Below, piece after piece: positions 33,001 through 64,000 of a stretch of DNA of 64,000 nucleotides. This DNA is from Auanema rhodensis (taxonomy: Eukaryota > Animalia > Nematoda). The translations under genes were made by a program, and so were the position numbers. The notes under the pieces were generated by a model. That model was given only the letters and a program-made list of their open reading frames with translations. It searched no databases and was not told the origin of the DNA. Each line of letters begins with the position of its first letter. Positions within the stretch are counted from its first letter, which is position 1. The stretch covers positions 1 through 64,000 of the forward strand of contig CAXKVF010000094.1 of NCBI GenBank assembly GCA_964057225.1, in the 5' to 3' direction.

Positions 33001-35533
33001 GGGATCTAATTTTGAAAACCGCATCTCTTTATCTTTCACGTGAAGCGAGTTACATACCAAGTGCACATCACGTGTACATTTAATTAGCATAAATTAAAGT
33101 TCACGTAAATTTCAAAGTCATGGTTACCATGAACCAATATCAATAAAAATTTGTTTTTAGACTAATATGGACATGGGGAATCTAATTTTGAAAACCGCAT
33201 CTCTTTATCTTTCACGTGAAGCGAGTTACATACCAAGTGCACATCACGTGTACATTTAATTAGCATAAATTAAAGTTCACGTAAATTTCAAAGTCATGGT
33301 TACCATGCACCAATATCAATAAAAATTTGTTTTTAGACTAATATGGACATGGGGAATCTAATTTTGAAAACCGCATCTCTTTATCTTTTACGTGAAGCGA
33401 GTTACATACCAAGTGCACATCACGTGTACATTTAATTAGCATAAATTAAAGTTCACGTAAATTTCAAAGTCATGGTTACCATGAACCAATATCAATAAAA
33501 ATTTGTTTTTAGACTAATATGGACATGGGGAATCTAATTTTGAAAACCGCATCTCTTTATCTTTCACGTGAAGCGAGTTACATACCAAGTGCACATCACG
33601 TGTACATTTAATCAGCATAAATTAAAGTTCACGTAAATTTCAAAGTCATGGTTACCATGCACCAATATCAATAAAAATTTGTTTTTAGACTAATATGGAC
33701 ATGGGGAATCTAATTTTGAAAACCGCATCTCTTTATCTTTCACGTGAAGCGAGTTACATACCAAGTGCACATCACGTGTACATTTAATCAGCATAAATTA
33801 AAGTTCACGTAAATTTCAAAGTCATGGTTACCATGCACCAATATCAATAAAAATTTGTTTTTAGACTAATATGGACATGGGGAATCTAATTTTGAAAACC
33901 GCATCTCTTTATCTTTCACGTGAAGCGAGTTACATACCAAGTGCACATCACGTGTACATTTAATTAGCATAAATTAAAGTTCACGTAAATTTCAAAGTCA
34001 TGGTTACCATGCACCAATATCAATAAAAATTTGTTTTTAGACTAATATGGACATGGGGAATCTAATTTTGAAAACCGCATCTCTTTATCTTTCACGTGAA
34101 GCGAGTTACATACCAAGTGCACATCACGTGTACATTTAATTAGCATAAATTAAAGTTCACGTAAATTTCAAAGTCATGGTTACCATGCACCAATATCAAT
34201 AAAAATTTGTTTTTAGACTAATATGGACATGGGGAATCTAATTTTGAAAACCGCATCTCTTTATCTTTTACGTGAAGCGAGTTACATACCAAGTGCACAT
34301 CACGTGTACATTTAATTAGCATAAATTAAAGTTCACGTAAATTTCAAAGTCATGGTTACCATGAACCAATATCAATAAAAATTTGTTTTTAGACTAATAT
34401 GGACATGGGGAATCTAATTTTGAAAACCGCATCTCTTTATCTTTCACGTGAAGCGAGTTACATACCAAGTGCACATCACGTGTACATTTAATTAGCATAA
34501 ATTAAAGTTCACGTAAATTTCAAAGTCATGGTTACCATGAACCAATATCAATAAAAATTTGTTTTTAGACTAATATGGACATGGGGAATCTAATTTTGAA
34601 AACCGCATCTCTTTATCTTTCACGTGAAGCGAGTTACATACCAAGTGCACATCACGTGTACATTTAATTAGCATAAATTAAAGTTCACGTAAATTTCAAA
34701 GTCATGGTTACCATGCACCAATATCAATAAAAATTTGTTTTTAGACTAATATGGACATGGGGAATCTAATTTTGAAAACCGCATCTCTTTATCTTTCACG
34801 TGAAGCGAGTTACATACCAAGTGCACATCACGTGTACATTTAATTAGCATAAATTAAAGTTCACGTAAATTTCAAAGTCATGGTTACCATGAACCAATAT
34901 CAATAAAAATTTGTTTTTAGACTAATATGGACATGGGGAATCTAATTTTGAAAACCGCATCTCTTTATCTTTCACGTGAAGCGAGTTACATACCAAGTGC
35001 ACATCACGTGTACATTTAATCAGCATAAATTAAAGTTCACGTAAATTTCAAAGTCATGGTTACCATGCACCAATATCAATAAAAATTTGTTTTTAGACTA
35101 ATATGGACATGGGGAATCTAATTTTGAAAACCGCATCTCTTTATCTTTCACGTGAAGCGAGTTACATACCAAGTGCACATCACGTGTACATTTAATTAGC
35201 ATAAATTAAAGTTCACGTAAATTTCAAAGTCATGGTTACCATGCACCAATATCAATAAAAATTTGTTTTTAGACTAATATGGACATGGGGAATCTAATTT
35301 TAAAAACCGCATCTCTTTATCTTTCACGTGAAGCGAGTTACATACCAAGTGCACATCACGTGTACATTTAATTAGCATAAATTAAAGTTCACGTAAATTT
35401 CAAAGTCATGGTTACCATGCACCAATATCAATAAAAATTCGTTTTTAGACTAATATGGACATGGGGAATCTAATTTTGAAAACCGCATCTCTTTATCTTT
35501 CACGTGAAGCGAGTTACATACCAAGTGCACATC
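1..35533. repeat. 176-bp tandem satellite array, left arm (201 complete monomers plus 160 bp of the interrupted monomer)
   Basis: Monomer AGCATAAATTAAAGTTCACG...CACGTGTACATTTAATT recurs at 1, 177, 353, 881 etc. Copies usually differ by only 0-3 substitutions. Three 175-bp monomers (GGGG>GGG near 13644, 16810, 25434) account exactly for the register shift seen at 35198. Confidence 0.99.
35530..35533 (+). other. Target-site duplication CATC (left copy; right copy 47605-47608)
   Basis: The empty monomer reads GTGCA-CATC-ACGTG; here it reads GTGCA-CATC-[element]-CATC-ACGTG. Confidence 0.95.
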
Positions 35534-35551
35534 CGTTCCATTCGGAGACTC

Positions 35552-35557
35552 TATATA
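35552..35557 (+). promoter_or_regulatory. Candidate LTR TATA box
   Basis: TATATA 18 nt into the LTR, just before a GC-richer structured segment. Other TATA-like strings exist in the LTR, so the assignment is uncertain. Confidence 0.35.
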
Positions 35558-35764
35558 TGTAACTGCAGGGTTAGAGCCAGACCGACTAGAGGAATGAGGA
35601 ATGGCACCGCCTTCCCTCATGCCCCTATTCGGGAGTTCGCCCCTTTGCAAGCCCATGGACGGTTTGCATCTAACTTAGTTAATCTTATATATTAGTCTTT
35701 GTCTTGTAAATGTAGTTTACTTTATACTTGTGTTATTGTATTGTAATGATATTGTATTGTGTAT

Positions 35765-35770
35765 AATAAA
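35765..35770 (+). promoter_or_regulatory. Candidate LTR polyadenylation signal (functional copy expected at 47470-47475)
   Basis: AATAAA inside the LTR, in a T/GT-rich context. Confidence 0.55.
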
Positions 35771-35899
35771 CCTATATATTTCCTTATCTTATGTAATCCT
35801 TATGCTCTGTTTCCATACCGCTACACTTATGGAATACTATACGCGTAGTTGAGCAGACTACAATGGTCTGTTCAATATACGTAGGAGCATAATGGAACG

Positions 35900-35912
35900 T
35901 GGAGGTTCCACC
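35900..35912 (+). promoter_or_regulatory. Primer-binding site, complementary to the 3' end of tRNA-Gln
   Basis: TGGAGGTTCCACC directly abuts the 5' LTR and is the reverse complement of ...GGTGGAACCT-CCA, the conserved 3' end of metazoan tRNA-Gln (recalled, not searched). Confidence 0.85.
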
Positions 35913-36875
35913 TCGAACTCATTTTTGTCGCAAAAACTCGCATAAAAAGTCCATATTTTGATATCTAAATTAAAACTTCCTCCACGGTTAGCAACATAAT
36001 GAGGGCGCCAACTTGTATAAGGTGCAGGTACAAGGGATCTCTCTTTTAGAGAGCTAGGACTATATAATTTTGAAATTTCACCCGCTGTCCCCACTCATAA
36101 AACCGTCTGAGTGTCCACCCTTATAATACCGTATCCTGCACCGCTTCTCTTGCATTTTTTTTTGAGGACGTTTGGATCGAAATAGGGGACAATTTCACCA
36201 AACGAAATTTTGATTACATTATTATTTGGCAACGAGGAGTTAGAATGAAATTTTGAAAGCGCACAAAGTTTAATATTTTATTGTGGTCAGGACTAGAGAT
36301 TTGAAAGTTAAATTCAGGCGTAAAAGAGCATGCTAACTAAATATTTTTGCGGGAGCCGTTATTCGGTTTTTATTTTTTTTTGATTGTGAGAATAGACCAC
36401 ACTAGTCCGAAAAATCCTGGCACAAATTTTATTGCCTGTCAGGTCATTTTGGCGAAAGCACATGGGCTACGGATGTTTTCTTCTCCGTAGAATGTGTCAC
36501 CTTCCTCAGCTCATTTTTGTTGCTAACATCATAAGATATTCCCACACACCTACCGTAGTATTCATATTGTAATATTCTATAAATTAGTACAATGGTTTAA
36601 AGAAAAATTGCGTTTTATAAACGAGCTTTGGTCTCAGTCCATTAGTAAAATGAGCAATCTTTTTAAATATTCTCGGAATCTCATTAGCATGCCAAAATCA
36701 TTCCGAAAAAGAATCGCCCACGGCTTTTAATAATCAACGTGCACATGAGCCATTTTCCCAAGGCGCACGCACTCCTTCTTTATTAATAAGCTCGACCAAA
36801 GTTTGTGTTATGGAAAAAAAAAGAGAGAGAGAACAAATGAGTGAAATTAAGTATTTATTATATATGAAACAATTG

Positions 36876-37472
36876 TTAAAAGCCCCATTTAAAATGCAAC
36901 TGTCTCACAAATTCTATAGGCTGTGAGATGGGCTCATTGCTAGGCTCTAAATACTGCGAATACACTGAATCCGCAGAGGTCCTTAGCAATAAGCCCATAG
37001 GAGACTGTTCATAAAACAAATAAATTTTAAACAAAATTTTAGACATATAATCATAAAAATCATGAGGCTTATGCTCATACCAATTCCAAGGGGATGCGAT
37101 TAAATTGGGGTTTTCATACCAATGCGCACACAAATCGGTGAGGCACCATCGCCCAATAGCTGCAACCTCATCCGCTATTTCTTGCATTAGGGAGAAATTC
37201 ACTAATCCCCTCCCCAGATAATGCATTTTTAAATCCTCGATAAACTAAAATTTTTTTTTATTATTATTAATATAACATGTTTCTTTGTTTTAACCAACCA
37301 TCTTAATCATGTCTGGGTGAGGCCTATAAGCTAACACTTCGTCTTGATCATACAAGACGAGGTCAGCGTACAGCTTTCTCAAGACAAAAGTCATTCCCGA
37401 TAGACCTTCATAAGCCATTCTTTGATTTTTTTTTCCTTCTTCAGCTCTACAAATATAAAGAATCTTATGCAT
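36876..37472 (-). CDS. Spliced antisense accessory gene of unknown function (exons 37472-37299 and 37244-36876, 180 aa; a possible further upstream exon 37767-37731 would give 199 aa)
   Basis: A 54-nt AT-rich intron, 37298-37245 (ATG|GTTGGT...AATTTTAG|TTT), joins the 60-aa and 116-aa ORFs in frame (..MIKM|FIEDLKMHYL..). An AATAAA lies 16 nt after the stop on the minus strand (36859-36854). Confidence 0.65.
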
Positions 37473-37832
37473 AAAAAGGGGACATAAAACGACTGAAAAT
37501 CTCTCTCATACTTTCAAGAATTCAATTAGAGTAAAGTATTAAGATTGAGGCTGGAAAGAGCGAAGACCAACAAAATTTATAATTGATGAACATCTGTGAA
37601 AAAGAATAAAGAAAAGAGAATACGGTAGATAGGCGGAGCCAGATCTCAGGCCAAGATTTTAAAACTCTTTCTCATCTAATAACGATTCTCGGCGAAAGAC
37701 GCCACGTCTCAATCTTCAAACTTTTCTTACTTTTCCCTATAACCGACCTGAATTTCTTGTCACTCATTCAACGTCAACATCCCCCATATAACGAAACACT
37801 CGCGGTTTTTCCAAACCAAGAGTGATTCCAAA

Positions 37833-40800
37833 GTGGCACGAAGATACTCTTCGGCCGTCCCTGCTCTATACCCTTCTGAGTCCAGTGACGACATCGCAGT
37901 CGCCAGTCGAACCAGAAGCCGCACTCGACTCCTCAGTGTTCAGATTGAAGAGCCTGAACAAGAGGTAAAACCCAAAGTCGAGAAAACCTTCATTCCTCGA
38001 GAAGGCACGTATTCACCTCCGGACAACACCGAGGAGGACCCTGATTTCTATATTCAGGACTACAATATTCAAACTTCAGCTTCAACTCCAAAGGTACACT
38101 CTTTTAAAAGTAATAAAAAGATTCAAAAAATTCAAAAACCAAAACAAATAACCTCTAATACTTCACCAGCCACCCCCCACCTAAACTTATCAACTTTATC
38201 AGTTAATACTGATAACGATCTTTCATCTTCTTTTGAACTAACTCTAACACCGCAGGCATTTTCCACTCCGATAGAAAACTCACAACTTAATAAAACCTCA
38301 TCTCTCACTATTCGCAAATCACCCTTATCAGTTGTCACTGATAAGCTTGATTCGAAAAAGCTTGATTCTAAAAAGATTAATAAAAGAAAAACTAATACAC
38401 CGCGTAGGCGCTCAACCTCTAATAATCCCGTAGAACCAAATCAGGAAATTACCGAAGTTTTGCCCTTATCACTAACTACTGATAAGTTCAAAAGTAAGAA
38501 ATCTTTAACAGCTCGCTTAATAAAAGTTTTGAATTTGTCTCCAGGGGAGGTAACAACAGAACAAGTTGATAACTCTCTTCACGTATCCTCCAACCCAACC
38601 CTTAATAAGTCAGATAGCGCTATACCCAGCTCAAGCGTTTCAATACATTCGACGCCTCAGGCAACGAGTCGAGTTATCAAACTCCCAGGGAAGCGGTTCT
38701 CCTCAGCCGCCCCTACCATTAGTTATCCAACATCTGGTAACTCGAAAAAGGGAGGTAAGAACTTAACGGCGAGAAGCTCAGGCAGTAAAGGGATTACGTC
38801 ATCTCGCACATACCCTGAGGATATACCAACCATGACGGAGACACCACGTCTTCCGGGAGCTGGTAAATCTACCATTGCGCACGCATTAAGCTCACCTTAT
38901 TGCCCCATATACGACGGAAGTCGTAACTTTAGAGATTTCGTGGCAAAGTTTAATACCTTTTCTAACGCCTTAGGCTTAGTGATGCCCGAAAGACTAACTA
39001 TTTTACCATTACTATTGAAAAATGATAGAGCAGAGGAAGCTTATTTAGAGCTACCTGACAAGGTCAGAACAGCTGGACCTTGGGTTACCCTAATAGAAGA
39101 GTTAACATCCAAGCTGTGTCCCGAATACAATCAAGACCCTGCCCTTATCACACTTCAAAACAGCACTCAAGGCGATTTATCAATTGATGGTTTTGCACAA
39201 ACGTTAAGAAACCTCAGCTTAAATGCTTTCTCTAATAGTGATACTCATAAAGATCACATTCTGAGGTCCACATTTTTGAGAGGCTTGAAAAATACGATAC
39301 GCCCAGGGGTAATTCGAGCAAAACCCAAAACTTTTGCTGAGGCCGTTGATAGTGCTCGCTGGGAGGAATCAATTGCAAACCAAGTAGCAGACCCTCAGGC
39401 GCTATTGGTTAACGCAATTGAAAGAACTTTCCCCCCGCGCAGAAACAATGGTGGGAGAGGTATGGCAAGAGGTTATCAATCTTTTAATAATAAAAATTAT
39501 CAAAATTATAATAATTATAACAATTATCATCCAAACTTTCAAAACAATCAAAATTATCATAAATTTTCAAAAAATCAAAAAGGCTGGAATTTCCAAAACC
39601 CATTTGCTAGGAACCGCAATTTTGGTGACCGCGGTCGAAATTATCAGAATCAAAATCAAAATGGGTATCAAAGAAGCCACAATGCATCACAAAATCAAGA
39701 AATGAGCAATAATAGACAGAGAAATAACAGTACCTTTAGGGGAAATAACAACAATAGAGGCAGAGGTAGAGGCTCAAGAGTCAATAATTTGACTCTGATA
39801 TCTCCTTTGACTTTAGCCGTAGCTTTATCAGTAATCTTATCACTGGTTACAACAGCTGAAGCATACCAGCTATGTACTAAAGCTACTGGAGGAGCCCTTC
39901 TCCGTCCCCCATCTCTCCGAAAATGCTTATTACCACCAATAAAGCATATCTTACGAACAAAAGTTCATCTTTATACAAGGAATCAAACGGCACATGAATG
40001 GGATGCATGGAGATGCTCCAAAGAAATTCATAAAATGTGTATCAGAGACCTTTTGTTCCTTAGAGATACCAATACAACGATAGCGAGAATTGAAAAGATA
40101 CCAGCTGCAGAATGCAGACTGGCAGTGAGAGATAGAAGATGGAATTGGAGTGAAATAAAGAAGATCGACAGCATAACATATGCAACTGACGAGCCTTCCT
40201 TCTCGCCAGGCCGATCTTTTAATAATGAACTATGTGAAGAGAAAGCCAGATTGGTTATCGAAAGAGGGGTTATGACACGGATGCCAGATGAAACTATAAT
40301 CTCCAATTTAATACTAAATACTGAAGGATGCTTAGCGCATCATGGAGAATGTGCATCAGATACCTCAATCATCATATGGGAGAAACAGCCTTATGAATAT
40401 CGATGCAACTATATCGACATGAGTGAATATGATGCGATAATTGGAGACGGCATTATTCTGTTACCAACCACTCAATCAGCCCTTGTAATCGATCAAAAAG
40501 AGATACCGAAGCAAATATCTTCTTGTTTTAAACAGCCAATCTTCCACACCACAACTGGCAATTACATTCTCTTACCACAGTACCCAAATGACACCAATAT
40601 CCATGTTTTAATAGAGAGAGAATATAAGAAACTTCCGGCGAAAAGAGATAAAAGAGCAATTGCGGAATGCACGGTTGAATTAAACAAGGAGTGGATACAA
40701 AAACAGGAAGATTTTGAAACTTTAATATTAAATATTTGTCCTTATCCTTTCTTACGACCGGTGATGAGTAATCCTGGTATTTATCAGATAATACCGCTTA

Positions 40801-43800
40801 TAAAGGCCAGACGAGCTGTCAACCCTTCATATTCAATTATTGATTGGGTTTCAGCACATCCCGAGAAGTTTTATTTCTTCTTAAGAAGTCCCGTATCTGA
40901 TAAATCCATACAACGTTTCCTTCAAACATACGAAATACACGACCCTGAGGAAGCAATACTTTATTTTCTTGCGCAAAAGGAACTGGCAGCAACCACTCGC
41001 GGCGCTATACGGTATTTAACCTCACAACAATTATTAGAACAGATAGGTGATAGATTAACAGCACACGAATTTGACGAAAAACTACTAGAAAAGGACGGAT
41101 CCTACCGTGAAAGAGCCGAAAGCATAGCGATGGAGCTAGCTTATACACCGGTAATATTTGAAAACAATCTGTCGGTACCATCGAGGCAAGAGGTTTTAAA
41201 ATCCTTTGTGAACATGCCGCCTATCCGACCAACTTTAACAACTGACAATGCTGATGAGCGTATAGTACTTAGAAATACTCTTTACTTATACCATAACTTG
41301 ATGACATTGCGAGTAATAAGGCCAAATAAAACAGCAGCAGCCGTAGATGATGAAAAGTTCCGACAATTAACAATCAATGTGCCAGATACCAACAAACTAT
41401 ATCGAGATAAAGATTCGAACTACGGTATATCGATAGGCCCCCACCCTCGCATTCAAACTCCAAGCGCGGATACACGCCAGCTACTTATAAAAACATTTTT
41501 ACCACTGTTAGAGGATATTGAAACACCGCCTTATCTGACTAGAAGACTGTCATTAACGACAACAACGGACAAACCCGCTTCACTAGTTCAGGAGACAACT
41601 ATAAGCTATACGACTCGGATTCCGACGACAACCATAGTTGACACGACAATAGCCGTGATAACTACGACTCTCTCGCCAACAACATTAGCAACAGTCACTG
41701 ACACGGCGTCACGAACCTTAAGGAAACAAAGAACATCATCTCCACCCGTAGAAACCAGAGAAATTCAGGCTCAGGCAACGTATACAGCGTCAAAAGTGAA
41801 CAACGAAATACAATTCAACCTCAACGTATCTCGCAGAATAGCTCAAGATCATCTACAATATACAACAACACTCATACAAGAAGAGCTACAGAAACATTTT
41901 ATGGAATCTTATGAATCCATATGTGAGATTCAAAATAGATACCTCGAGCTATGGCGTTCTATTTTACACATAGAACCCACAATAGCAATGAGGACTATTT
42001 TAGGAAGAGAGGATATTGCAGCCCGTTTCGTAGGCAGCGATATAGTTCATGTTCATATATGCCTACCTCTTCAACCTAAAGCTGTTTATCATAATCATAA
42101 GATCAATGATACATGCTATTTGGAAACACCAGTAATAACAGAAGATGAGAGATTATATTTTGCTGCTCCAGGATCAAGAGACTTATTAACACATGGAAAA
42201 GAGATAGATTGCGAACATGTACCAACAGATGTGTACTATCAAAATGGAGAATGGATAAATATAAATGGATCGGTTGAAGTAAAACCAATATCACTCTTTG
42301 ATAAAGCGCAATACCACCAATTAACACCTTTAAAGTTCACAGGCGCTAACTTATACACCAATTTATCATTGAGAGTTTACTCAATGTCAACAGCTATTGC
42401 ATATGGAGCAAGTTTAGCATCCATACGACAGAACCATGTTTTACATACTATTCACAACGATCCAAAGATTACGTCAGCCTTTAATCTTTTGAAAAAGGGC
42501 AGTGACTATATCTCTAAAGCAGCTGAGTTCACAACTTCCGCCTGGACTAGCGTAAAACAATTTCTAATAGGTTCAATTGAGAGAACACTCATCTTCATAG
42601 GATCAATAGTCACGATTGCCGCAGTATTAATAATTCTTTTCGTTGTTGCTAAATTTTGGTTCTTCAGAGCCACTCCACTAACCGTAATGCATGTCCACGA
42701 AATAGATAATGAGCCCCCAAGCTATGAAGAAACATTGGAACTTGTAAGCCGCCCAGACCAACAGATGCCAGATAACATCATGAAGCAATACTATCCTGCT
42801 TTAGTAACATTTATTCCAATCGCAATACCATTTGTTGCTTCTATTGCATCAGCGGAAACAAAGTTACCATTAATATATATATCAGTTGAAGATAAACTGA
42901 TTTTAGCTTTATGGGATTCAGGCTCATCAGTGTCATATGTTAGGCTCTCCACCCTCAAATATCTGAACATGGCCGAAAATGTCAAGAAGAGACATTTAGT
43001 AGCGATGGCAGCCAACAAGTCCACTTTCACATTTTATGGAAAGATAAATCTTGTAATTGAAATTGCCGGTTACGAGATCGAACACACCTTTTTGGTCTCA
43101 AACGATCATGACTGTCCTGCTCCCGCTTTAATTGGACTAGATTTCATGAAAGCGCTTGACAGCGAGAACATCGACGTCAGCCTTAAACCATCCAAGAAGA
43201 GGTTGGAGATTGGAAACAATGCCATCCCATTAATAGGAAACGAATCTATTAAGCATACGGAGATAACTGTGAATATCATTAATTTAAGAACAAAAACATT
43301 AAAGCCTGATGAAGAGGCACCTATCCCAATAAGGACAGATAAACCACTAGAATCTAACGAAGTGGTTGTCTTAGGGGATAGTGGAAGCGCATTAAAATCA
43401 TTATATCCAACTGCGTTTCGTGATACCAGTGGAGTATATGTTATGTTCCGTAACGATACCGATGAAACAATAGCTATGGAAGCTAATTCAGTCATCGGAC
43501 AGGCAATAATTGGAGAAATTCCGGCTTGTGAACCCTTTAAGCATAAGCCAATTCTACCATATGTTCCGCCAGAAGCCGATTGGGAGAGTAAACTACCATA
43601 TTTTCCAAGAGACTTCATAAAAGATCTTGATCTAGAGAATGCTGATCTCACGAAAGAAGAAAAACATGAGCTTACAAAAATAATTGAAAGCCATCGTGAG
43701 GCATTTCTTAACGAGGACAGGAAAATAGGATTATTTAAAGGTCCTATAGAGCATACCATACCATTGAGAACAGATATGGATATGCCAAAGCCGAGAATAA

Positions 43801-46538
43801 CACGTATTCCCTTAGGAAAACAGGAAGAAATTGAAAAGCAAGTCAAAGAAATGCTTGAGCAAGGCATAATAGAGCCTTCTACATCTCTATTTAATAGCCC
43901 TGTAGTACTAGTTAAGAAGAAAGATGACACGTATAGGTTTGTGACAGATTTTCGAGCTTTAAATAATGTCACACGCAAGCAAACTTATGTCATTCCAAGC
44001 ATTTCTGACATAGTTGATTTGGCAGCAGGCGCCCAATTTTTCTCAAACTTCGATTTAGTGTCAGGATTTTTTCAAATATCCTTGAGAAAATCAGATCGAC
44101 CACTAACAGCATTTACGACCACATCCGGCACATACCAGTACAAACGGATGCCGATGGGCCTTTGTGGAGCCCCTCATACCTTTCAAACAGCAGTAAGGTA
44201 TTTGCAAAGTAAATGTTCTTGTAAACTATTTGTTTATTTGGACGATCTATTAGTTATATCTGATACAAGAGAACAACATCTCAAAGATATCGATGATTTA
44301 CTGCAAGCAGTAGAAGAATTGGGAATGAAGATAAAGCTTAAGAAATGCGCTTTTGCTCAACCAGAAGTGAAATTTCTAGGACTTATTGTAGGACGTCAAG
44401 GTATAAAACCTGACCCTCAAAAAGTCGCCGCCATACAAGATTATCCGGCACCAAAGAATGCAACAGGTGTACGAGCATTCTTGGGAATGGTTGGATTCTT
44501 TCGCAAATTCATGAAAGATTTTGCACGTATCGCAAGCCCTTTATACGATCTGACAAAGGCAGATACTGAATTCAAATGGGAAAACAAACATCAAGAAGCT
44601 TTAGACCTCCTTAAAAGAAGTTTAATACAGGCACCCGTTTTAAGCCCACCTAAATCGGACCGCTTGTTTATAGTTGAAAGCGACGGTAGTAACATCGCCA
44701 TAGGTGCTGTATTATTACAACCGGAAGATCCAAAACAACCTCTGAAAAATCTACACCCTATCGCATTTGCAAGCAGAAAACTAGTTAAAGCCGAACGTAA
44801 CTACGCACCAATCGAGATAGAAGCATTAGGCCTTGTATATGCATTAAATCAATTCCGTACATACATTCTTGGAACTCATACTATATGTATTACGGACCAT
44901 CGACCTCTTACCAGCTTAATGACACGCAGAGACTTATTTGGTCGTCTTGCGAAGTTCCAGCTGGTCATCCAAGAATATGATATTGAAATAAAATATCGCG
45001 CAGGCCAATTAAATAAAGTATGCGATGCTCTATCTCGATATATAGGTGAAGAAGCTAACGATGCTAAGCCGGAAACAAAGAAGAAGAAAATGGAAGAAAT
45101 TCACATTAACGCCATAAATACACCAACAATAAAGGAAATTCAACTAAGCACCCCTTGGATTAAACGGACGATAGCGGAGATTGAATATAGAGCACAAAAG
45201 AACATGACAGCTAATGACAGATATTGTGTCATAAATGACTTGCTCTATACAAAACCAACAGACAAAAAGCCACAACCCGCTATCGTAATACCACAAGAAC
45301 ACCCCATAATTGAGGAAATAATCAAAGTTTTTCATGAGGATCCTACAATTGCAGCACATCAAGGAATTATTAAAACAAAAGAAGCAATTCTAAGAAGATT
45401 CTATTGGACAAATATGCAGAACGACATTACTATATTCATCAAGAACTGCATTAAATGTGCTCAAAGAAAAAAAGATCCACATTCCATGACGGTACAACCA
45501 ATAGGTCATTTTGAGATACCAAGCAAGCCATTTGAACGAGTCCACATGGACGTAATGGGACCATTTCCCCCTTCAAAAAGAAACTGTACCTACGTCATTA
45601 CCATGCAAGACGCATTTACAAAATGGTCAACAACAATTGCTGTACCACAAATAACAACGGAAATCACAATTGACCGATTTCTACGACATTTCGTTTACAT
45701 TTTTGGACCACCCCATCGCTTGATCACCGATAGAGGTTCGAACTTTGTATCCAAAAAGTTCGAAGAAATGTGTACTAAACTTGGAATCAAACATGAACCA
45801 ACACTACCACACCAAAAGAACTCAAATGGACAAGTGGAAAGACTTCACAGAACCCTCGAAGAAGGATTAACCCACTACTTAAAAGAGGACCTTAGTGACT
45901 GGGATACTGTATTACCAAAAATCACTTTTGCTATTAACAATATTCAGCACGCGACTACAGGGATTGCGCCTTACATTGCATTATTCGGTAAAGAATGCAG
46001 AATGTCAATGGACGCTGAATTACCAGAAACGATCACCAAAATTCAAGAAATTTCTGAAGAATTACTCCAAAGAAGACCAGATATGGACAAGAGAGACGAA
46101 ATAATAAAGAACCGCATAGCTAAAAATCAAGAAAATGCGAAAAAGAAGAAAGATAGAACGCAAAGAGCACACCATAGAGTCATTCAACCGGGCGACATGG
46201 TGATGACGACTATAAAATCACACCAAATCGGCCAAAAGCTTCGGAAAAGCTATGATGGACCATACGAAGTCATCAACGTAGAAGGATCAAAAGTTCAAAT
46301 CAGAAATTCATCAGGAAAACTACAAGATATCCACAAAGATAACTTGAAAATCTTCTCTCCTGCTTCACAAAACATCTCTTACAACACTCGCGCAAGATTT
46401 CGAGAAAGTCAAGCAGAAGAAGATAGCGACATCGAAATAATAGAAGTGATCAACAGGAACAACAAGGATAGCATAGATACAGAGCCAGAAGATGAAAATG
46501 AAGACGAAATATGGCTTCCGAGGAATGAAGAAGAATAA
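37833..46538 (+). CDS. Gag-Env-Pol single polyprotein (2901 codons from GTG; frame open from 37752; first in-frame ATG at 38832, so the true start is uncertain)
   Basis: Uninterrupted ORF with capsid-like, glycoprotein, aspartic protease (DSG), RT (YLDD), RNase H and integrase (HHCC, DDE, GPY) motifs. Confidence 0.95.
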   Translation: MARRYSSAVPALYPSESSDDIAVASRTRSRTRLLSVQIEEPEQEVKPKVEKTFIPREGTYSPPDNTEEDPDFYIQDYNIQTSASTPKVHSFKSNKKIQKIQKPKQITSNTSPATPHLNLSTLSVNTDNDLSSSFELTLTPQAFSTPIENSQLNKTSSLTIRKSPLSVVTDKLDSKKLDSKKINKRKTNTPRRRSTSNNPVEPNQEITEVLPLSLTTDKFKSKKSLTARLIKVLNLSPGEVTTEQVDNSLHVSSNPTLNKSDSAIPSSSVSIHSTPQATSRVIKLPGKRFSSAAPTISYPTSGNSKKGGKNLTARSSGSKGITSSRTYPEDIPTMTETPRLPGAGKSTIAHALSSPYCPIYDGSRNFRDFVAKFNTFSNALGLVMPERLTILPLLLKNDRAEEAYLELPDKVRTAGPWVTLIEELTSKLCPEYNQDPALITLQNSTQGDLSIDGFAQTLRNLSLNAFSNSDTHKDHILRSTFLRGLKNTIRPGVIRAKPKTFAEAVDSARWEESIANQVADPQALLVNAIERTFPPRRNNGGRGMARGYQSFNNKNYQNYNNYNNYHPNFQNNQNYHKFSKNQKGWNFQNPFARNRNFGDRGRNYQNQNQNGYQRSHNASQNQEMSNNRQRNNSTFRGNNNNRGRGRGSRVNNLTLISPLTLAVALSVILSLVTTAEAYQLCTKATGGALLRPPSLRKCLLPPIKHILRTKVHLYTRNQTAHEWDAWRCSKEIHKMCIRDLLFLRDTNTTIARIEKIPAAECRLAVRDRRWNWSEIKKIDSITYATDEPSFSPGRSFNNELCEEKARLVIERGVMTRMPDETIISNLILNTEGCLAHHGECASDTSIIIWEKQPYEYRCNYIDMSEYDAIIGDGIILLPTTQSALVIDQKEIPKQISSCFKQPIFHTTTGNYILLPQYPNDTNIHVLIEREYKKLPAKRDKRAIAECTVELNKEWIQKQEDFETLILNICPYPFLRPVMSNPGIYQIIPLIKARRAVNPSYSIIDWVSAHPEKFYFFLRSPVSDKSIQRFLQTYEIHDPEEAILYFLAQKELAATTRGAIRYLTSQQLLEQIGDRLTAHEFDEKLLEKDGSYRERAESIAMELAYTPVIFENNLSVPSRQEVLKSFVNMPPIRPTLTTDNADERIVLRNTLYLYHNLMTLRVIRPNKTAAAVDDEKFRQLTINVPDTNKLYRDKDSNYGISIGPHPRIQTPSADTRQLLIKTFLPLLEDIETPPYLTRRLSLTTTTDKPASLVQETTISYTTRIPTTTIVDTTIAVITTTLSPTTLATVTDTASRTLRKQRTSSPPVETREIQAQATYTASKVNNEIQFNLNVSRRIAQDHLQYTTTLIQEELQKHFMESYESICEIQNRYLELWRSILHIEPTIAMRTILGREDIAARFVGSDIVHVHICLPLQPKAVYHNHKINDTCYLETPVITEDERLYFAAPGSRDLLTHGKEIDCEHVPTDVYYQNGEWININGSVEVKPISLFDKAQYHQLTPLKFTGANLYTNLSLRVYSMSTAIAYGASLASIRQNHVLHTIHNDPKITSAFNLLKKGSDYISKAAEFTTSAWTSVKQFLIGSIERTLIFIGSIVTIAAVLIILFVVAKFWFFRATPLTVMHVHEIDNEPPSYEETLELVSRPDQQMPDNIMKQYYPALVTFIPIAIPFVASIASAETKLPLIYISVEDKLILALWDSGSSVSYVRLSTLKYLNMAENVKKRHLVAMAANKSTFTFYGKINLVIEIAGYEIEHTFLVSNDHDCPAPALIGLDFMKALDSENIDVSLKPSKKRLEIGNNAIPLIGNESIKHTEITVNIINLRTKTLKPDEEAPIPIRTDKPLESNEVVVLGDSGSALKSLYPTAFRDTSGVYVMFRNDTDETIAMEANSVIGQAIIGEIPACEPFKHKPILPYVPPEADWESKLPYFPRDFIKDLDLENADLTKEEKHELTKIIESHREAFLNEDRKIGLFKGPIEHTIPLRTDMDMPKPRITRIPLGKQEEIEKQVKEMLEQGIIEPSTSLFNSPVVLVKKKDDTYRFVTDFRALNNVTRKQTYVIPSISDIVDLAAGAQFFSNFDLVSGFFQISLRKSDRPLTAFTTTSGTYQYKRMPMGLCGAPHTFQTAVRYLQSKCSCKLFVYLDDLLVISDTREQHLKDIDDLLQAVEELGMKIKLKKCAFAQPEVKFLGLIVGRQGIKPDPQKVAAIQDYPAPKNATGVRAFLGMVGFFRKFMKDFARIASPLYDLTKADTEFKWENKHQEALDLLKRSLIQAPVLSPPKSDRLFIVESDGSNIAIGAVLLQPEDPKQPLKNLHPIAFASRKLVKAERNYAPIEIEALGLVYALNQFRTYILGTHTICITDHRPLTSLMTRRDLFGRLAKFQLVIQEYDIEIKYRAGQLNKVCDALSRYIGEEANDAKPETKKKKMEEIHINAINTPTIKEIQLSTPWIKRTIAEIEYRAQKNMTANDRYCVINDLLYTKPTDKKPQPAIVIPQEHPIIEEIIKVFHEDPTIAAHQGIIKTKEAILRRFYWTNMQNDITIFIKNCIKCAQRKKDPHSMTVQPIGHFEIPSKPFERVHMDVMGPFPPSKRNCTYVITMQDAFTKWSTTIAVPQITTEITIDRFLRHFVYIFGPPHRLITDRGSNFVSKKFEEMCTKLGIKHEPTLPHQKNSNGQVERLHRTLEEGLTHYLKEDLSDWDTVLPKITFAINNIQHATTGIAPYIALFGKECRMSMDAELPETITKIQEISEELLQRRPDMDKRDEIIKNRIAKNQENAKKKKDRTQRAHHRVIQPGDMVMTTIKSHQIGQKLRKSYDGPYEVINVEGSKVQIRNSSGKLQDIHKDNLKIFSPASQNISYNTRARFRESQAEEDSDIEIIEVINRNNKDSIDTEPEDENEDEIWLPRNEEE
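38832..39788 (+). other. gag: Gag region: capsid-like domain (about 38898-39370) followed by an N/Q/RG-rich nucleocapsid-like low-complexity segment (about 39438-39788)
   Basis: YDGS..F..F...F, Q....I..FA..L..L and FLRGL....R..V....PKTFAEAV..A...E patterns are typical of Ty3/Gypsy capsids. No CCHC knuckle is present. Confidence 0.8.
39789..42665 (+). other. env: Envelope-like class III (herpesvirus gB / chuvirus G-like) glycoprotein domain within the polyprotein
   Basis: Internal signal peptide LTLISPLTLAVALSVILSLVTTAEA|YQLC; 16 Cys; about ten N-X-S/T sequons; furin site RDKR (40644-40655). gB domain III/IV-like block CEIQNRYLELW...EPTIAMRTILGREDIAARFVGSDIVHVHIC...TCYLETPV...IDC (41922-42212). 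TM helix at 42588-42650. Confidence 0.85.
42862..43150 (+). other. Retropepsin aspartic protease domain
   Basis: ALWDSGSSVSYV catalytic motif (D at 42915) and C-terminal ALIGLDF motif. Confidence 0.93.
43746..44400 (+). other. Reverse transcriptase domain
   Basis: SPVVLVKKKD..YRFVTDFRALN, DLVSGFFQI, TAFTT..G.YQY.RMPMGL..AP..FQ, YLDD (44235-44246), KC.F....VKFLG. Confidence 0.98.
44668..45038 (+). other. RNase H domain (Ty3/Gypsy type)
   Basis: FIVESDGS..AIGAVLLQ, PIAFASRKL..AERNY...EIEALG, TDHRPL, DALSR. Confidence 0.95.
45330..46350 (+). other. Integrase (HHCC zinc finger, DDE core, GPY/F module)
   Basis: H(45333)...HQG...CIKC; HMDVMGP, TDRGSNF, NGQVERLHRTL; YDGPYEV. Confidence 0.97.
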
Positions 46539-47227
46539 CAACAAGATAATGCTACGTTATTTAAATTATTGTAACAAAATAACGATGAATTAGAGAAAAA
46601 AAAAATTAATACTAAATAACATTCAAAATAAAAATAGCATTTAATAGAGAATGAGAAAGGAAAAATAAGGCAAATTCTAAACGAGGAGATGTTATGACTA
46701 ATGGTTCCAAGTTACCGTAATCCTATGCGGACTAGAGGACATTTTGACAACCATCCGAGCTCCATGTGCCTCTCCAAATAAGATGAGATAAACACTGGTA
46801 GGCGTATCAACCACAATTTCATCTTAAGTGGTAGTCTCCATTAGTAATCAAGGATTCACTCTGGGAGACATATGGAGACACATTATTAAATCATAATCTC
46901 GGTTCAATTTAGAAATGAGTACTTCTTGAGACCATTAGTCAAAATAATAACATATTCCCATTCATTACTAGCCCCTTATTCTACAATCTCTATTAGGAAA
47001 TGCTTGAATATTAAGATAATTAATTTATGAAATTAATAATATTCTAATTCATCGTCACTTCATATTATATTGAACCCTTCTTATAAATTATTGTAATTTT
47101 GTTTTTATACTAATTAAAACTCTATCATACTATAGTTATTGTGAAGCTAAAACAATTGAACTCTAAAACTCAGTTACATATAAGCCCAAATTTTTGTTTA
47201 AAATATCGCGAGGTCGCGACAATCTTT

Positions 47228-47236
47228 GAAAAAGGG
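47228..47236 (+). promoter_or_regulatory. Polypurine tract
   Basis: GAAAAAGGG lies 2 nt upstream of the 3' LTR. Confidence 0.75.
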
Positions 47237-47238
47237 CA

Positions 47239-47604
47239 CGTTCCATTCGGAGACTCTATATATGTAACTGCAGGGTTAGAGCCAGACCGACTAGAGGAAT
47301 GAGGAATGGCACCGCCTTCCCTCATGCCCCTATTCGGGAGTTCGCCCCTTTGCAAGCCCATGGACGGTTTGCATCTAACTTAGTTAATCTTATATATTAG
47401 TCTTTGTCTTGTAAATGTAGTTTACTTTATACTTGTGTTATTGTATTGTAATGATATTGTATTGTGTATAATAAACCTATATATTTCCTTATCTTATGTA
47501 ATCCTTATGCTCTGTTTCCATACCGCTACACTTATGGAATACTATACGCGTAGTTGAGCAGACTACAATGGTCTGTTCAATATACGTAGGAGCATAATGG
47601 AACG
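47239..47604 (+). repeat. 3' LTR (366 bp)
   Basis: Direct repeat of 35534-35899, preceded by the PPT and followed by the CATC TSD. Confidence 0.97.
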
Positions 47605-62600: not shown

Positions 62601-64000
62601 CACGTAAATTTCAAAGTCATGGTTACCATGCACCAATATCAATAAAAATTTGTTTTTAGACTAATATGGACATGGGGAATCTAATTTTGAAAACCGCATC
62701 TCTTTATCTTTCACGTGAAGCGAGTTACATACCAAGTGCACATCACGTGTACATTTAATTAGCATAAATTAAAGTTCACGTAAATTTCAAAGTCATGGTT
62801 ACCATGAAGCAATATCAATAAAAATTTGTTTTTAGACTAATATGGACATGGGGAATCTAATTTTGAAAACCGCATCTCTTTATCTTTCACGTGAAGCGAG
62901 TTACATACCAAGTGCACATCACGTGTACATTAAATTAGCATAAATTAAAGTTCACGAAAATTTCAAAGTCATGGTTACCATGCACCAATATCAATTAAAA
63001 TTTGTTTTTAGACTAATATGGACATGGGGAATCTAATTTTGTAAACCGCATCTCTTTATCTTTCACGTGAAGCGAGTTACATACCAAGTGCACATCACGT
63101 GTACATTTAATTAGCATAAATTAAAGTTCACGTAAATTTCAAAGTCATGGTTACCATGCACCAATATCAATAAAAATTTGTTTTTAGACTAATATGGACA
63201 TGGGGAATCTAATTTTGAAAACCGCATCTCTTTATCTTTCACGTGAAGCGAGTTACATACCAAGTGCACATCACGTGTACATTTAATTAGCATAAATTAA
63301 AGTTCACGTAAATTTCAAAGTCATGGTTACCATGAAGCAATATCAATAAAAATTTGTTTTTAGACTAATATGGACATGGGGAATCTAATTTTGAAAACCG
63401 CATCTCTTTATCTTTCACGTGAAGCGAGTTACATACCAAGTGCACATCACGTGTACATTTAATTAGCATAAATTAAAGTTCACGTAAATTTCAAAGTCAT
63501 GGTTACCATGCACCAATATCAATTAAAATTTGTTTTTAGACTAATATGGACATGGGGAATCTAATTTTGTAAACCGCATCTCTTTATCTTTCACGTGAAG
63601 CGAGTTACATACCAAGTGCACATCACGTGTACATTTAATTAGCATAAATTAAAGTTCACGTAAATTTCAAAGTCATGGTTACCATGCACCAATATCAATA
63701 AAAATTGGTTTTTAGACTAATATGGACATGGGGAATCTAATTTTGAAAACCGCATCTCTTTATCTTTCACGTGAAGCGAGTTACATACCAAGTGCACATC
63801 ACGTGTACATTTAATTAGCATAAATTAAAGTTCACGTAAATTTCAAAGTCATGGTTACCATGCACCAATATCAATAAAAATTTGTTTTTAGACTAATATG
63901 GACATGGGGAATCTAATTTTGAAAACCGCATCTCTTTATCTTTCACGTGAAGCGAGTTACATACCAAGTGCACATCACGTGTACATTTAATTAGCATAAA
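47605..64000. repeat. 176-bp tandem satellite array, right arm (remainder of the interrupted monomer plus 93 complete monomers; runs off the window)
   Basis: Same monomer and orientation. It resumes at monomer position 157 (CATC) and the next monomer starts at 47625. 47625-64000 = 93 x 176 + 8. Confidence 0.99.

What the first reader, a model, noticed from the sequence alone, without database searches (positions are those of the whole stretch)
39789..42665. gB-like class III fusogen embedded in frame between Gag and Pol: a gag-env-pol single-polyprotein retroelement
Seen: about 960 codons between the nucleocapsid-like segment and the protease carry a signal peptide, a Cys-rich glycosylated ectodomain, a furin site and a TM helix, with no stop or frameshift. 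Known: env in retroviruses and errantiviruses is a separate ORF 3' of pol. The block CExQN..LxLW....P..AM..ILGR..IAAR..G..V.V..C...CY..P mirrors herpesvirus gB domains III/IV. gB-like env capture has been described for the Ascaris BEL/Pao element Tas. Inference: this is a potentially infectious enveloped Metavirus with an unusual gene order. The topology is self-consistent, like a flavi/alphavirus polyprotein: Gag cytosolic, Env lumenal, Pol cytosolic again. Related nematode Cer1-like elements may share the layout, so novelty needs checking.
Basis: partly seen in the sequence, partly recalled or inferred. Interest (0 to 1): 0.92.

Follow-up and report, generated by a model that had tools for sequence, protein, structure and literature searches.

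The report
Nematode retrovirus-like element, gag-env-pol ORF
An apparently intact, very young retrovirus-like element sits in a satellite array and carries a herpesvirus-gB/rhabdovirus-G-type fusion protein in frame between its capsid and polymerase genes, but this unusual gene order has already been described for nematode elements, so this is a good new example and not a new kind of thing.

Summary
Window 35534-47604 is a 12,071-bp LTR element. Its two 366-bp LTRs are 100% identical. It has a 4-bp target duplication and lies precisely in a 176-bp satellite array. One uninterrupted ORF (37833-46538, 2901 codons, 0 stops, 0 frameshifts) encodes Gag, then a ~960-codon envelope segment (39789-42665), then PR-RT-RNaseH-IN of Ty3/gypsy type.

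The envelope segment has:
- an internal signal-like segment and one strong TM helix;
- 16 Cys and 10 N-glycosylation sequons;
- an R-D-K-R site.

It matches Pfam Monjiviricetes_fusion above threshold (56.6 bits) and herpesvirus Glycoprotein_B just below (38 bits). Its AlphaFold model retrieves only herpesvirus gB from the PDB (E ~1e-12, prob 1.0), and class III glycoproteins from BFVD.

GAG-ENV-POL elements with gB-type Env in Nematoda, Bryozoa and Platyhelminthes are described in eLife 2026 (PMC13524379), which cites Sacco et al. 2022. I also found the same fused layout in dozens of predicted proteins from Auanema, Caenorhabditis, Acrobeloides and Diploscapter. The closest relative is only 44-56% identical, so this is a new member of a known kind.

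Three features are left unexplained or lineage-specific:
- a 360-codon ATG-free, stop-free extension upstream of Gag;
- an orphan helical domain inserted in Env;
- a second hydrophobic segment just before the protease.

The parts
35530..35533 (+). Target-site duplication, left copy (CATC)
   Evidence: The same 4 bases recur at 47605-47608. The flanks are otherwise contiguous satellite sequence.
35534..35899 (+). 5' LTR, 366 bp
   Evidence: It is 100% identical to 47239-47604, and its ends form a short inverted repeat.
35900..35910 (+). Primer-binding-site-like motif starting TGG, directly after the 5' LTR
   Evidence: Read from the sequence. The tRNA was not identified.
35900..37751 (+). 5' leader, about 1.85 kb, no convincing ORF
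   Evidence: It has 30-44 stops in each + frame and no frame preference in codon log-odds.
37752..38831 (+). In-frame open extension upstream of the first ATG: 360 codons, S/T/K/P-rich, no ATG in any frame
   Evidence: It has 0 stops where ~19 are expected (0 of 20000 shuffles) and 0 ATG (4 of 3000 dinucleotide shuffles). Its codon log-odds pattern matches the gag core. It has no homologue among the fetched relatives.
37833..46538 (+). Single gag-env-pol ORF as listed by the ORF tool (2901 codons, intact: 0 stops, 0 frameshifts)
38832..39794 (+). Gag: first in-frame ATG, capsid-like core (about 38901-39422), then a basic N/Q/R/G-rich tail without a zinc knuckle
   Evidence: Pfam Ty3_capsid is weak (E 0.003, below cut-off). 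The core is homologous to the N-terminal parts of 27 relatives, where it starts 15-30 aa into several of those proteins. There is no CCHC motif.
39795..39860 (+). Internal signal-like hydrophobic segment at the Gag/Env junction
   Evidence: Kyte-Doolittle maximum 2.24, a basic n-region and an A-x-A end. An equivalent segment precedes env in 62 of 68 relatives.
39861..40595 (+). Env N-terminal beta-rich part (model residues 1-245), with 10 of the Cys
   Evidence: AF2 pLDDT is mostly 80-97. Eight of these 10 Cys are conserved in at least 89% of aligned rows.
40644..40655 (+). Furin-type R-D-K-R motif in a low-confidence loop
   Evidence: It is conserved within +-15 residues in 21 of 36 relatives.
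40686..41513 (+). Lineage-specific all-helical insert in Env, about 280 aa
   Evidence: The AF2 model has pLDDT 76 and pTM 0.76. It has no PDB sequence or fold match: best Foldseek E 0.01, probability 0.18. Only six fetched proteins match it (P0001, P0004, P0005, P0067, P0088, P0117); those with a named source are from Auanema.
41535..41744 (+). Thr/Ser-rich disordered stretch (mucin-like)
   Evidence: S+T fraction is 0.44 and pLDDT is below 50.
41748..42260 (+). Env conserved C-terminal core: a 75-residue central helix followed by a beta domain. This is the region matching gB and Monjiviricetes_fusion.
   Evidence: Pfam PF24664 E 1.6e-15 and PF00606 E 1.6e-9. phmmer against the PDB returns only gB chains. 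AF2 helix 630-704 has pLDDT 90-97. Four Cys are conserved in at least 96% of rows.
42588..42662 (+). Transmembrane anchor of Env
   Evidence: Kyte-Doolittle maximum 3.09. One strong TM is present at this position in all 47 env-PR chains.
42714..42725 (+). P-P-S-Y motif in the tail after the TM
   Evidence: The Auanema relative P0001 also has it.
42789..42857 (+). Second, weaker hydrophobic segment abutting the protease
   Evidence: Kyte-Doolittle maximum 2.07. It is present in 13 of 47 chains, mostly the closest relatives.
42882..43151 (+). Aspartic protease (D-S-G)
   Evidence: Pfam gag-asp_proteas and Asp_protease_2 are sub-threshold (E 3e-4 and 7e-4). The motif is shown.
43911..44387 (+). 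Reverse transcriptase (Y-L-D-D)
   Evidence: Pfam RVT_1 E 2.1e-32. The motif is shown.
44577..44978 (+). RNase H
   Evidence: Pfam RT_RNaseH and RT_RNaseH_2, E ~1e-28.
45306..45812 (+). Integrase (H2C2 zinc domain plus catalytic core)
   Evidence: Pfam Integrase_H2C2 E 3.3e-15 and rve E 2.3e-15.
47228..47236 (+). Polypurine tract just upstream of the 3' LTR
   Evidence: Read from the sequence.
47239..47604 (+). 3' LTR, 366 bp
47605..47608 (+). Target-site duplication, right copy (CATC)

Best explanation
Window 35534-47604 is a structurally complete, very recently inserted endogenous retrovirus-like element of the Ty3/gypsy (Metaviridae) lineage. Its host is most likely a rhabditid nematode. 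It belongs to the already described group whose genes are ordered gag-env-pol and whose Env is a class III fusion glycoprotein (the herpesvirus gB / Monjiviricetes G fold).

Shown:
- identical LTRs, a target duplication, and PBS- and PPT-like motifs;
- one uninterrupted ORF;
- pol domains in the order PR-RT-RNaseH-IN with catalytic motifs present;
- sequence-family and predicted-fold membership of Env in class III;
- the same fused layout in many nematode relatives.

Inferred mechanism:
1. The ORF is translated as one polyprotein. Gag is made in the cytosol.
2. The internal signal-like segment at the Gag/Env junction targets the nascent chain to the ER, and signal peptidase cuts after it.
3. 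The Env ectodomain is translocated, disulfide-bonded and glycosylated, and is cut at R-D-K-R by a furin-type protease.
4. The TM helix stops transfer, so the tail (with its P-P-S-Y motif) and PR-RT-RNaseH-IN return to the cytosolic side, tethered to the membrane.
5. The element's own protease then releases them.

This would give Gag, Env and Pol in equal amounts from one mRNA. Pol would be linked to the Env tail and not to Gag.
For: Element anatomy:
- The LTRs are 366/366 identical, the TSD is CATC, and the flanks are contiguous satellite.
- The ORF has 2901 codons with no interruption.
- Pfam finds RVT_1 2e-32, RT_RNaseH 1e-28, Integrase_H2C2 3e-15, rve 2e-15 and a (sub-threshold) PR match, in Ty3/gypsy order. 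D-S-G, Y-L-D-D and HHCC are present.

Env identity:
- PF24664 scores 56.6 bits against a cut-off of 27, and PF00606 scores 38 against 43.
- phmmer against the PDB returns only gB chains.
- The AF2 model has pLDDT 74.8 and a 75-residue central helix.
- Foldseek against the PDB gives herpesvirus gB for all top 50 hits, E ~1e-12, probability 1.0.
- Foldseek against BFVD gives glycoproteins of rhabdo-, nya-, chu- and xinmo-like viruses plus gB.

Evidence for a polyprotein:
- In this element no Met lies within 35 aa upstream of the env N-terminus (the nearest is about 53 aa upstream), and there is no stop before PR.
- Of 151 relatives, 40 are env-pol, 13 gag-env-pol and 10 gag-env in one chain. None with a gypsy-type pol is pol-env.
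- The C. nigoni and C. auriculariae loci are intronless continuous ORFs.
- Auanema P0001 has the same junctions.

Topology:
- A signal-like segment precedes env in 62 of 68 relatives.
- Exactly one strong TM lies between env and PR in all 47 chains.

Literature:
- GAG-ENV-POL with HSV/gB-type ENV in Nematoda is reported in PMC13524379.
Against: - No transcript, protein or activity data exist for this element, so the polyprotein route, the cleavage sites and the topology are inferred.
- A second hydrophobic segment (aa 1653-1675, Kyte-Doolittle 2.07) sits directly before PR. If it spans the membrane, it would put Pol on the wrong side.
- 47 of 68 relatives have a Met near the env signal, so separate initiation of Env is conceivable in the family.
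- The true start of translation is unclear. The first ATG is at 38832, yet 360 upstream codons look coding.
- The Gag assignment rests on a sub-threshold Pfam hit plus homology to relatives.
- The nematode host is inferred only from the nearest relatives.
- The Foldseek TM-scores are low (0.26-0.45). I attribute this (inference, not tested) to the large insert and to domain orientation in the monomer model.
Confidence: 0.8

Rival explanations
1. The continuous frame is real, but Env and/or Pol are mainly produced from spliced or subgenomic mRNAs, as for env in retroviruses and insect errantiviruses. For example, env could be removed as an in-frame intron to give a classical Gag-Pol. The full polyprotein would then be a minor or non-functional product.
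For: - The second hydrophobic segment before PR makes the simple polyprotein topology awkward in this clade.
- 47 of 68 relatives have a Met within 35 aa of the env signal.
- Tethering Pol to the Env tail and not to Gag is an unusual way to package Pol (established knowledge of retroelement assembly).
Against: - In this element and in Auanema P0001 there is no Met within 35 aa upstream of the env N-terminus (nearest Met in the window about 53 aa upstream) and no stop after the TM.
- Frame continuity gag-env and env-pol is kept across dozens of diverged relatives and in two intronless loci. This would not be needed if the parts were expressed separately.
- I made no splice-site prediction.
Confidence: 0.12
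2. The element is a purely intracellular retrotransposon, and its Env is a conserved passenger that no longer mediates membrane fusion or cell-to-cell transfer.
For: - No functional data exist.
- Env carries a large orphan helical insert and a mucin-like stretch in the loop after the furin-type site, which could disturb a fusogen.
- Elements with equimolar Gag and Pol can transpose without Env (established knowledge).
Against: - Env is fully open over 959 codons in a copy with identical LTRs.
- 12 of 16 Cys are conserved in at least 89% of aligned relatives, and the central-helix region is conserved down to E 1e-15 against a viral family profile.
- The signal-like segment, the TM anchor and (in 21 of 36 aligned relatives) the furin-type motif are retained.
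- All of this indicates continuing constraint on a membrane glycoprotein.
Confidence: 0.06
3. The locus is not a mobile element but a domesticated host gene or an assembly chimera.
For: - Only one copy is visible in the 64-kb window.
- The host genome could not be searched.
Against: - The LTRs are perfect, the 4-bp duplication is precise, and the flanks restore the satellite monomer phase.
- PBS- and PPT-like motifs are present.
- The full set of pol domains is present with catalytic motifs.
Confidence: 0.02

Closest known systems
Nematode GAG-ENV-POL elements with HSV/gB-type Env: the 'ancient errantiviruses' of Chary & Hayashi, eLife 2026 (PMC13524379), and the non-canonical nematode ERVs of Sacco et al. 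2022, J Gen Virol (cited there; not held in the library)
   Same: - A Ty3/gypsy-type pol.
- A class III Env placed between gag and pol.
- LTRs.
- Nematode relatives (Auanema, Caenorhabditis, Acrobeloides, Diploscapter) carry homologous gag, env and pol in the same order and in one chain.
   Different: - It is only 44-56% identical to the nearest database protein, so it is a distinct lineage from an unsampled host.
- It has a 360-codon ATG-free in-frame extension upstream of Gag that the two relatives whose loci I checked lack.
- It has an orphan helical insert in Env shared only with a few fetched proteins; those that carry a source name are from Auanema.
- Its position in the published POL trees was not tested.
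Herpesvirus glycoprotein B (Pfam PF00606; e.g. PDB 2gum, 5v2s, 9ih8)
   Same: - The predicted fold: the top 50 Foldseek PDB hits are all gB, probability 1.0.
- Sequence similarity over the central helix and the following domain.
- A furin-type site in the loop before the central helix, and a single C-terminal TM.
   Different: - The score is below Pfam's curated cut-off (38 vs 43 bits).
- Identity in the structural alignments is about 8-11%.
- About 350 extra residues (helical insert plus Thr-rich stretch) are present.
- It is encoded inside a retroelement polyprotein and has no start codon of its own.
Fusion glycoproteins of Monjiviricetes (Pfam PF24664: nyami-, chu-, xinmo- and rhabdo-like viruses)
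   Same: - This is the best sequence family: 56.6 bits against a cut-off of 27.
- It gives the top BFVD fold hits, E down to 2e-16.
- This agrees with the 'RNA virus glycoprotein capture' wording in the title of Sacco et al. 2022.
   Different: - Those proteins are stand-alone genes of negative-strand RNA viruses.
- The profile match covers only positions 314-448 of 653.
- The direction and source of the transfer cannot be decided from these data.
Tas of Ascaris and other BEL/Pao (Belpaoviridae) elements with a class III or phlebovirus-like Env, e.g. Atlas virus (PMC9094657)
   Same: - They are nematode LTR elements that acquired a non-retroviral fusogen.
- Atlas encodes a single Gag-Pol-Env polyprotein without stops.
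- BEL/Pao polyproteins carrying the same Env family appear among my hits: P0052 and P0095.
   Different: - Their pol is of BEL/Pao type (Peptidase_A17, DUF1759), which is absent here.
- Their order is gag-pol-env.
- The Atlas Env is class II.
Insect errantiviruses (gypsy, ZAM, Idefix)
   Same: They have a Ty3/gypsy pol and carry an envelope gene.
   Different: Their env is F-type (baculovirus F / paramyxovirus F-like) and is a separate ORF 3' of pol expressed from a spliced mRNA (PMC13524379; established knowledge).

Membership tests
Ty3/gypsy LTR retroelement (Metaviridae) | Direct long terminal repeats flanked by a short target-site duplication | tested here: met
   The 366-bp LTRs are 100% identical. 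The 4-bp CATC duplication and the flanks restore the satellite monomer.
Ty3/gypsy LTR retroelement (Metaviridae) | pol domain order PR-RT-RNaseH-IN, with catalytic motifs | tested here: met
   The Pfam order is PR (sub-threshold match), RVT_1, RT_RNaseH, Integrase_H2C2, rve. D-S-G, Y-L-D-D and HHCC are present. There is no Peptidase_A17 or copia-type order.
Ty3/gypsy LTR retroelement (Metaviridae) | Gag with a Ty3/retroviral-type capsid domain | tested here: inconclusive
   Ty3_capsid scores E 0.003, 17 bits, below the cut-off of 29. There is no PDB sequence hit. The region is homologous to the N-terminal parts of 27 relatives, two of which carry precomputed capsid Pfam hits.
Ty3/gypsy LTR retroelement (Metaviridae) | tRNA primer-binding site after the 5' LTR and a polypurine tract before the 3' LTR | tested here: inconclusive
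   A TGG-starting motif and a purine run lie at the right places. The tRNA was not identified because no host tRNA set was available.
Class III viral fusion glycoprotein (gB / G / gp64 fold) | Sequence membership in a class III family profile | tested here: met
   PF24664 Monjiviricetes_fusion scores 56.6 bits against a cut-off of 27. PF00606 Glycoprotein_B scores 38 bits, below its cut-off of 43.
Class III viral fusion glycoprotein (gB / G / gp64 fold) | Overall fold with a long central helix and beta-rich domains | tested here: met
   The AF2 model has pLDDT 74.8 and a helix at 630-704. The Foldseek PDB top 50 are all gB, E ~1e-12. The BFVD hits are class III glycoproteins. The TM-scores are modest (0.26-0.45).
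Class III viral fusion glycoprotein (gB / G / gp64 fold) | Type I membrane topology: N-terminal signal and a single C-terminal TM | tested here: met
   Hydropathy and the -3/-1 rule support it. The pattern is family-wide. No dedicated predictor was available.
Class III viral fusion glycoprotein (gB / G / gp64 fold) | Trimeric assembly and bipartite internal fusion loops | not tested
   Only a monomer was modelled, and the fusion loops were not mapped.
Class III viral fusion glycoprotein (gB / G / gp64 fold) | Membrane-fusion activity | not testable with these tools
   No functional data are available.
Nematode GAG-ENV-POL gB-type elements (PMC13524379; Sacco et al. 2022) | env located between gag and pol | tested here: met
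Nematode GAG-ENV-POL gB-type elements (PMC13524379; Sacco et al. 2022) | Homology of gag, env and pol to elements of nematodes with the same order | tested here: met
   Homologues come from Auanema sp. JU1783, Caenorhabditis brenneri, japonica, nigoni, remanei and auriculariae, Acrobeloides nanus and Diploscapter pachys. Two loci are continuous ORFs.
Nematode GAG-ENV-POL gB-type elements (PMC13524379; Sacco et al. 2022) | Placement within the published POL / ENV clades and cysteine-bridge configurations | not tested
Nematode GAG-ENV-POL gB-type elements (PMC13524379; Sacco et al. 2022) | The host is a nematode | not testable with these tools
   The window holds only the element and a 176-bp satellite. 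The host is inferred from the nearest relatives.
BEL/Pao elements with gB-like env (Tas type) | BEL/Pao-type pol (Peptidase_A17 and the associated DUF domains) with env 3' of pol | tested here: not met
   The window has no Peptidase_A17, DUF1759 or DUF5641. These are present in the BEL/Pao hits P0052, P0095 and P0105.
Insect Errantivirus genus | F-type env as a separate ORF downstream of pol | tested here: not met
   Env is class III and lies upstream of pol in the same ORF. The 700 nt after pol contain no ORF of note.

The most novel reading that the evidence does not exclude
This copy may represent a currently active, so far unsampled lineage of nematode enveloped retroelements with two additions of its own. 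The first would be a long Gag isoform translated from a non-AUG start, or from an unseen upstream exon, across the 360-codon ATG-free, stop-free extension. The second would be a folded ~280-aa helical module plus a mucin-like stalk inserted after the furin-type site of a class III fusogen, acting as a lineage-specific surface (receptor-binding or shielding) domain.
Probability: 0.25. Interest if true: 0.6.

Novelty: new member of a known kind. Interest (0 to 1): 0.4.

Why it matters
Retroelements that carry a fusogen sit on the boundary between transposon and virus. The gag-env-pol order raises a real mechanistic question: how is a membrane glycoprotein produced from the middle of a polyprotein, and how is Pol packaged when it hangs from the Env tail and not from Gag?

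This copy is an unusually clean specimen for descriptive work on that question. It has identical LTRs and an intact 2901-codon ORF, and it lacks a Met near the Env signal, so separate Env initiation is unlikely here. It does not open a new category, because the architecture and its wide distribution are already published.

Tried and rejected
- Word-indexed protein searches with Env, alone and as a region of the polyprotein, each found only one protein (Auanema P0001). The exhaustive HMMER search was needed to see the family.
- An exact look-up of the 2901-aa product found no public contig, so the host is unidentified. A literature search for a 176-bp nematode satellite gave nothing relevant.
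- Sacco et al. 2022 is not held in the library, and the eLife supplementary files are not held. I therefore could not place the element in the published clades. What I recall of the Sacco abstract (a continuous gag-env-pro-pol ORF) is from memory only.
- The helical Env insert had no PDB sequence match and no fold match, so no function is assigned.
- Gag had no PDB sequence match.
- The antisense 290-aa ORF (43106-43978) and the N-terminal extension had no Pfam family.
- I rejected a BEL/Pao (Tas-like) assignment, an insert-free gB, and a host-gene or assembly-artefact reading.
- I did not attempt splice-site prediction or any joining of segments.

Full report
**Setting.** The window is almost entirely a tandem array of a 176-bp satellite: 361 copies, with neighbouring monomers about 99% identical. 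Base composition departs from the satellite only between about 35.5 and 47.6 kb. That interval is one LTR element, 35534-47604 (12,071 bp).

- Its LTRs (35534-35899 and 47239-47604) are 366 bp and identical at every base.
- CATC flanks both ends. The upstream and downstream flanks are otherwise contiguous in the satellite monomer, so this is a precise insertion with a 4-bp duplication.
- A TGG-starting primer-binding-like motif follows the 5' LTR, and a purine run precedes the 3' LTR.
- No other LTR copy is present in the window.

**The observation.** A single ORF runs from 37833 to 46538. The tool starts it at a GTG, but the frame is open from 37752. It has 2901 codons and no interruption. 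All genes of the element are therefore intact: 0 stops, 0 frameshifts.

Pfam places a protease (sub-threshold match), RVT_1 (2e-32), RNase H (1e-28), the integrase zinc domain (3e-15) and the integrase core (2e-15) in the last 1290 codons, in Ty3/gypsy order. D-S-G, Y-L-D-D and an HHCC motif are present.

The first part has a weak Ty3_capsid match. It is homologous to the N-terminal parts of 27 related polyproteins. Its C-terminus is a basic N/Q/R/G-rich stretch with no Cys and no zinc knuckle, so 'nucleocapsid-like' is only loosely apt.

The flagged 959 codons (39789-42665) lie between these two parts. In order, they contain:

1. A signal-like hydrophobic segment ending A-x-A (ORF aa 655-676).
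2. A 909-aa ectodomain with 16 Cys and 10 sequons.
3. R-D-K-R at aa 938-941.
4. A strong TM at aa ~1586-1610.

**What the middle segment is.**

- Sequence: PF24664 (Monjiviricetes fusion glycoprotein) scores 56.6 bits, above its cut-off of 27. PF00606 (herpesvirus gB ectodomain) scores 38 bits, just under its cut-off of 43. phmmer against all PDB chains returns 44 sequences, every one a herpesvirus gB. All align to the same ~100 residues, best E 3e-4.
- Fold: an AlphaFold2 model built on 50 family sequences has mean pLDDT 74.8. It shows a confident beta-rich N-terminal part, a 75-residue central helix with pLDDT 90-97, and a following beta domain.
- Foldseek against the PDB gives herpesvirus gB for all top 50 hits (E 2e-12 to 2e-9, probability 1.0). 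The TM-scores are only 0.26-0.45.
- Foldseek against BFVD gives glycoproteins of rhabdo-like, nya-, chu- and xinmo-like negative-strand RNA viruses together with gB (E down to 2e-16).

The class III assignment therefore holds. 'gB-like' is fair as a fold label, but the nearest sequence family is the RNA-virus one.

Twelve of the 16 Cys are conserved in at least 89% of aligned relatives. A furin-type motif recurs at the same place in 21 of 36.

**Lineage-specific parts of Env.** Two blocks lie between the furin-type site and the central helix:

- A ~280-aa all-helical block. Its separate model has pLDDT 76 and pTM 0.76. It has no sequence match and no fold match in the PDB (best E 0.01, probability 0.18). 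Only six fetched proteins match it; those that carry a source name are from Auanema.
- A Thr/Ser-rich disordered stretch.

The length of this inter-domain region varies from 58 to 544 residues across the family.

**Is the layout shared?** The exhaustive profile-free HMMER scan found 323 proteins at E<=1e-3. I mapped the window's own domains onto the best 150 plus P0001:

| Layout in one chain | Proteins |
|---|---|
| env-pol | 40 |
| gag-env-pol | 13 |
| gag-env | 10 |
| env only | 88 |
| pol-env with a gypsy-type pol | 0 |

- Proteins with env at the far C-terminus are BEL/Pao elements carrying Peptidase_A17 and DUF1759. These are the Tas-like arrangement.
- Named sources are all nematodes: Auanema sp. 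JU1783, Caenorhabditis brenneri, japonica, nigoni, remanei and auriculariae, Acrobeloides nanus and Diploscapter pachys.
- In C. nigoni and C. auriculariae the gene length equals three times the protein length plus a stop. The fused ORF is therefore intronless at the DNA level.
- Auanema P0001 shows the same Gag-tail / signal / Env / TM / P-P-x-Y / hydrophobic / PR sequence of features.
- The nearest proteins are 44% (Env), 53% (Pol) and 56% (an Env fragment) identical. No public contig encodes the exact product. The host is therefore unsampled in these databases.

**Literature.**

- Chary & Hayashi (eLife 2026, PMC13524379) state that errantivirus-like elements of Nematoda, Bryozoa and Platyhelminthes carry only HSV/gB-type ENV, arranged GAG-ENV-POL. 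They say this follows the earlier report of non-canonical nematode ERVs by Sacco et al. 2022. The Sacco paper is not in the library.
- Single Gag-Pol-Env polyproteins in nematode belpaoviruses, and the gB-like env of Tas (Malik et al. 2000), are summarised in PMC9094657.

The architecture is therefore already catalogued for this clade.

**How it most likely works.**

Shown:
- The ORF is continuous.
- In this element no Met lies within 35 aa upstream of the Env N-terminus; the nearest is about 53 aa upstream. There is no stop before PR.
- A signal-like segment precedes env in 62 of 68 relatives.
- One strong TM lies between env and PR in all 47 chains that contain both.

Inferred:
1. The polyprotein is targeted to the ER co-translationally by the internal signal.
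2. Signal peptidase cuts at the A-x-A site.
3. The ectodomain is translocated, glycosylated and cut by a furin-type protease.
4. The TM stops transfer, which returns the tail (with P-P-S-Y) and Pol to the cytosolic face.
5. The element's protease releases them.

Consequences of this model, also inferred: Gag, Env and Pol are made in equal amounts, and Pol is tethered to the membrane through Env and not fused to Gag.

One complication is a second hydrophobic segment (aa 1653-1675, Kyte-Doolittle 2.07, proline-containing) that abuts the protease. It occurs in 13 of 47 chains, mostly the closest relatives, and scores 1.6-1.9 in nearly all of them. I regard it as more likely a non-spanning or interfacial element than a second TM, but this is not tested.

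The main rival is expression through spliced mRNAs. It is disfavoured by the family-wide maintenance of frame, but only transcript data can settle it.

**Unexplained.** The 360 codons upstream of the first in-frame ATG (37752-38831) have these properties:

- No stop in frame, against an expected ~19 (0 of 20000 shuffles).
- No ATG in any frame, against a dinucleotide-shuffle mean of 5.8 (4 of 3000 shuffles with none).
- A codon-usage pattern like that of the gag core, whereas the 1.85-kb leader shows no frame preference.
- No homologue among the fetched relatives. In several relatives the Gag core starts 15-30 aa into the protein, which matches a start at the window's first ATG.
- The two relatives with DNA in hand have only 86 and 16 open codons upstream.

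Two readings are possible: a non-AUG-initiated long Gag isoform, or an unseen upstream exon. Neither is shown.

**Verdict.** The novelty is that of a new, well-preserved and apparently young member of a known kind. I score interest 0.4. A specialist would not be surprised by the architecture, but the specimen is clean and has a few lineage-specific oddities worth descriptive follow-up.

Noticed in passing
window 37752-38831: This is a 360-codon in-frame open stretch upstream of the first ATG of the big ORF. It has no stop in frame and no ATG in any frame, and its codon usage resembles gag. It is S/T/K/P-rich and has no homologue in the fetched relatives.
   Followed up: partly
window 40686-41513: A ~280-aa all-helical domain is inserted in Env after the furin-type site. 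It is confidently modelled but has no sequence or fold match in the PDB. Only six fetched proteins match it; those with a named source are from Auanema.
   Followed up: yes
window 42714-42725 and 42789-42857: A P-P-S-Y motif (late-domain-like) lies in the Env tail. A second proline-containing hydrophobic segment lies directly before the protease. Both are shared with Auanema P0001, and the hydrophobic segment recurs in the closest Caenorhabditis relatives.
   Followed up: partly
window 1-35533 and 47605-64000: The rest of the window is a very homogeneous 176-bp satellite (about 99% identity between neighbouring monomers, more than 50 kb). The element is the only interruption, and it is inserted with the monomer phase preserved.
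   Followed up: partly
window 43106-43978, minus strand: A 290-aa ORF (TTG start) lies antisense to the PR-RT region. It has no Pfam family and is probably a by-product of the strand's composition.
   Followed up: partly
window 35900-37751 and 46539-47238: The element has a long 5' leader (1.85 kb) and a 700-nt 3' untranslated part without convincing ORFs. I did not examine them for repeats or RNA structure.
   Followed up: no
P0052, P0095, P0105 (representative library): BEL/Pao-type polyproteins carry the same Env family at their C-terminus (gag-pol-env). One glycoprotein family therefore sits in two retroelement lineages, in different positions.
   Followed up: partly
P0162 (C. auriculariae, 3045 aa): A relative's predicted protein also carries translation-factor GTPase Pfam domains (PF00009, PF03143, PF22594). 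This is probably a gene-model fusion with a neighbouring host gene.
   Followed up: no
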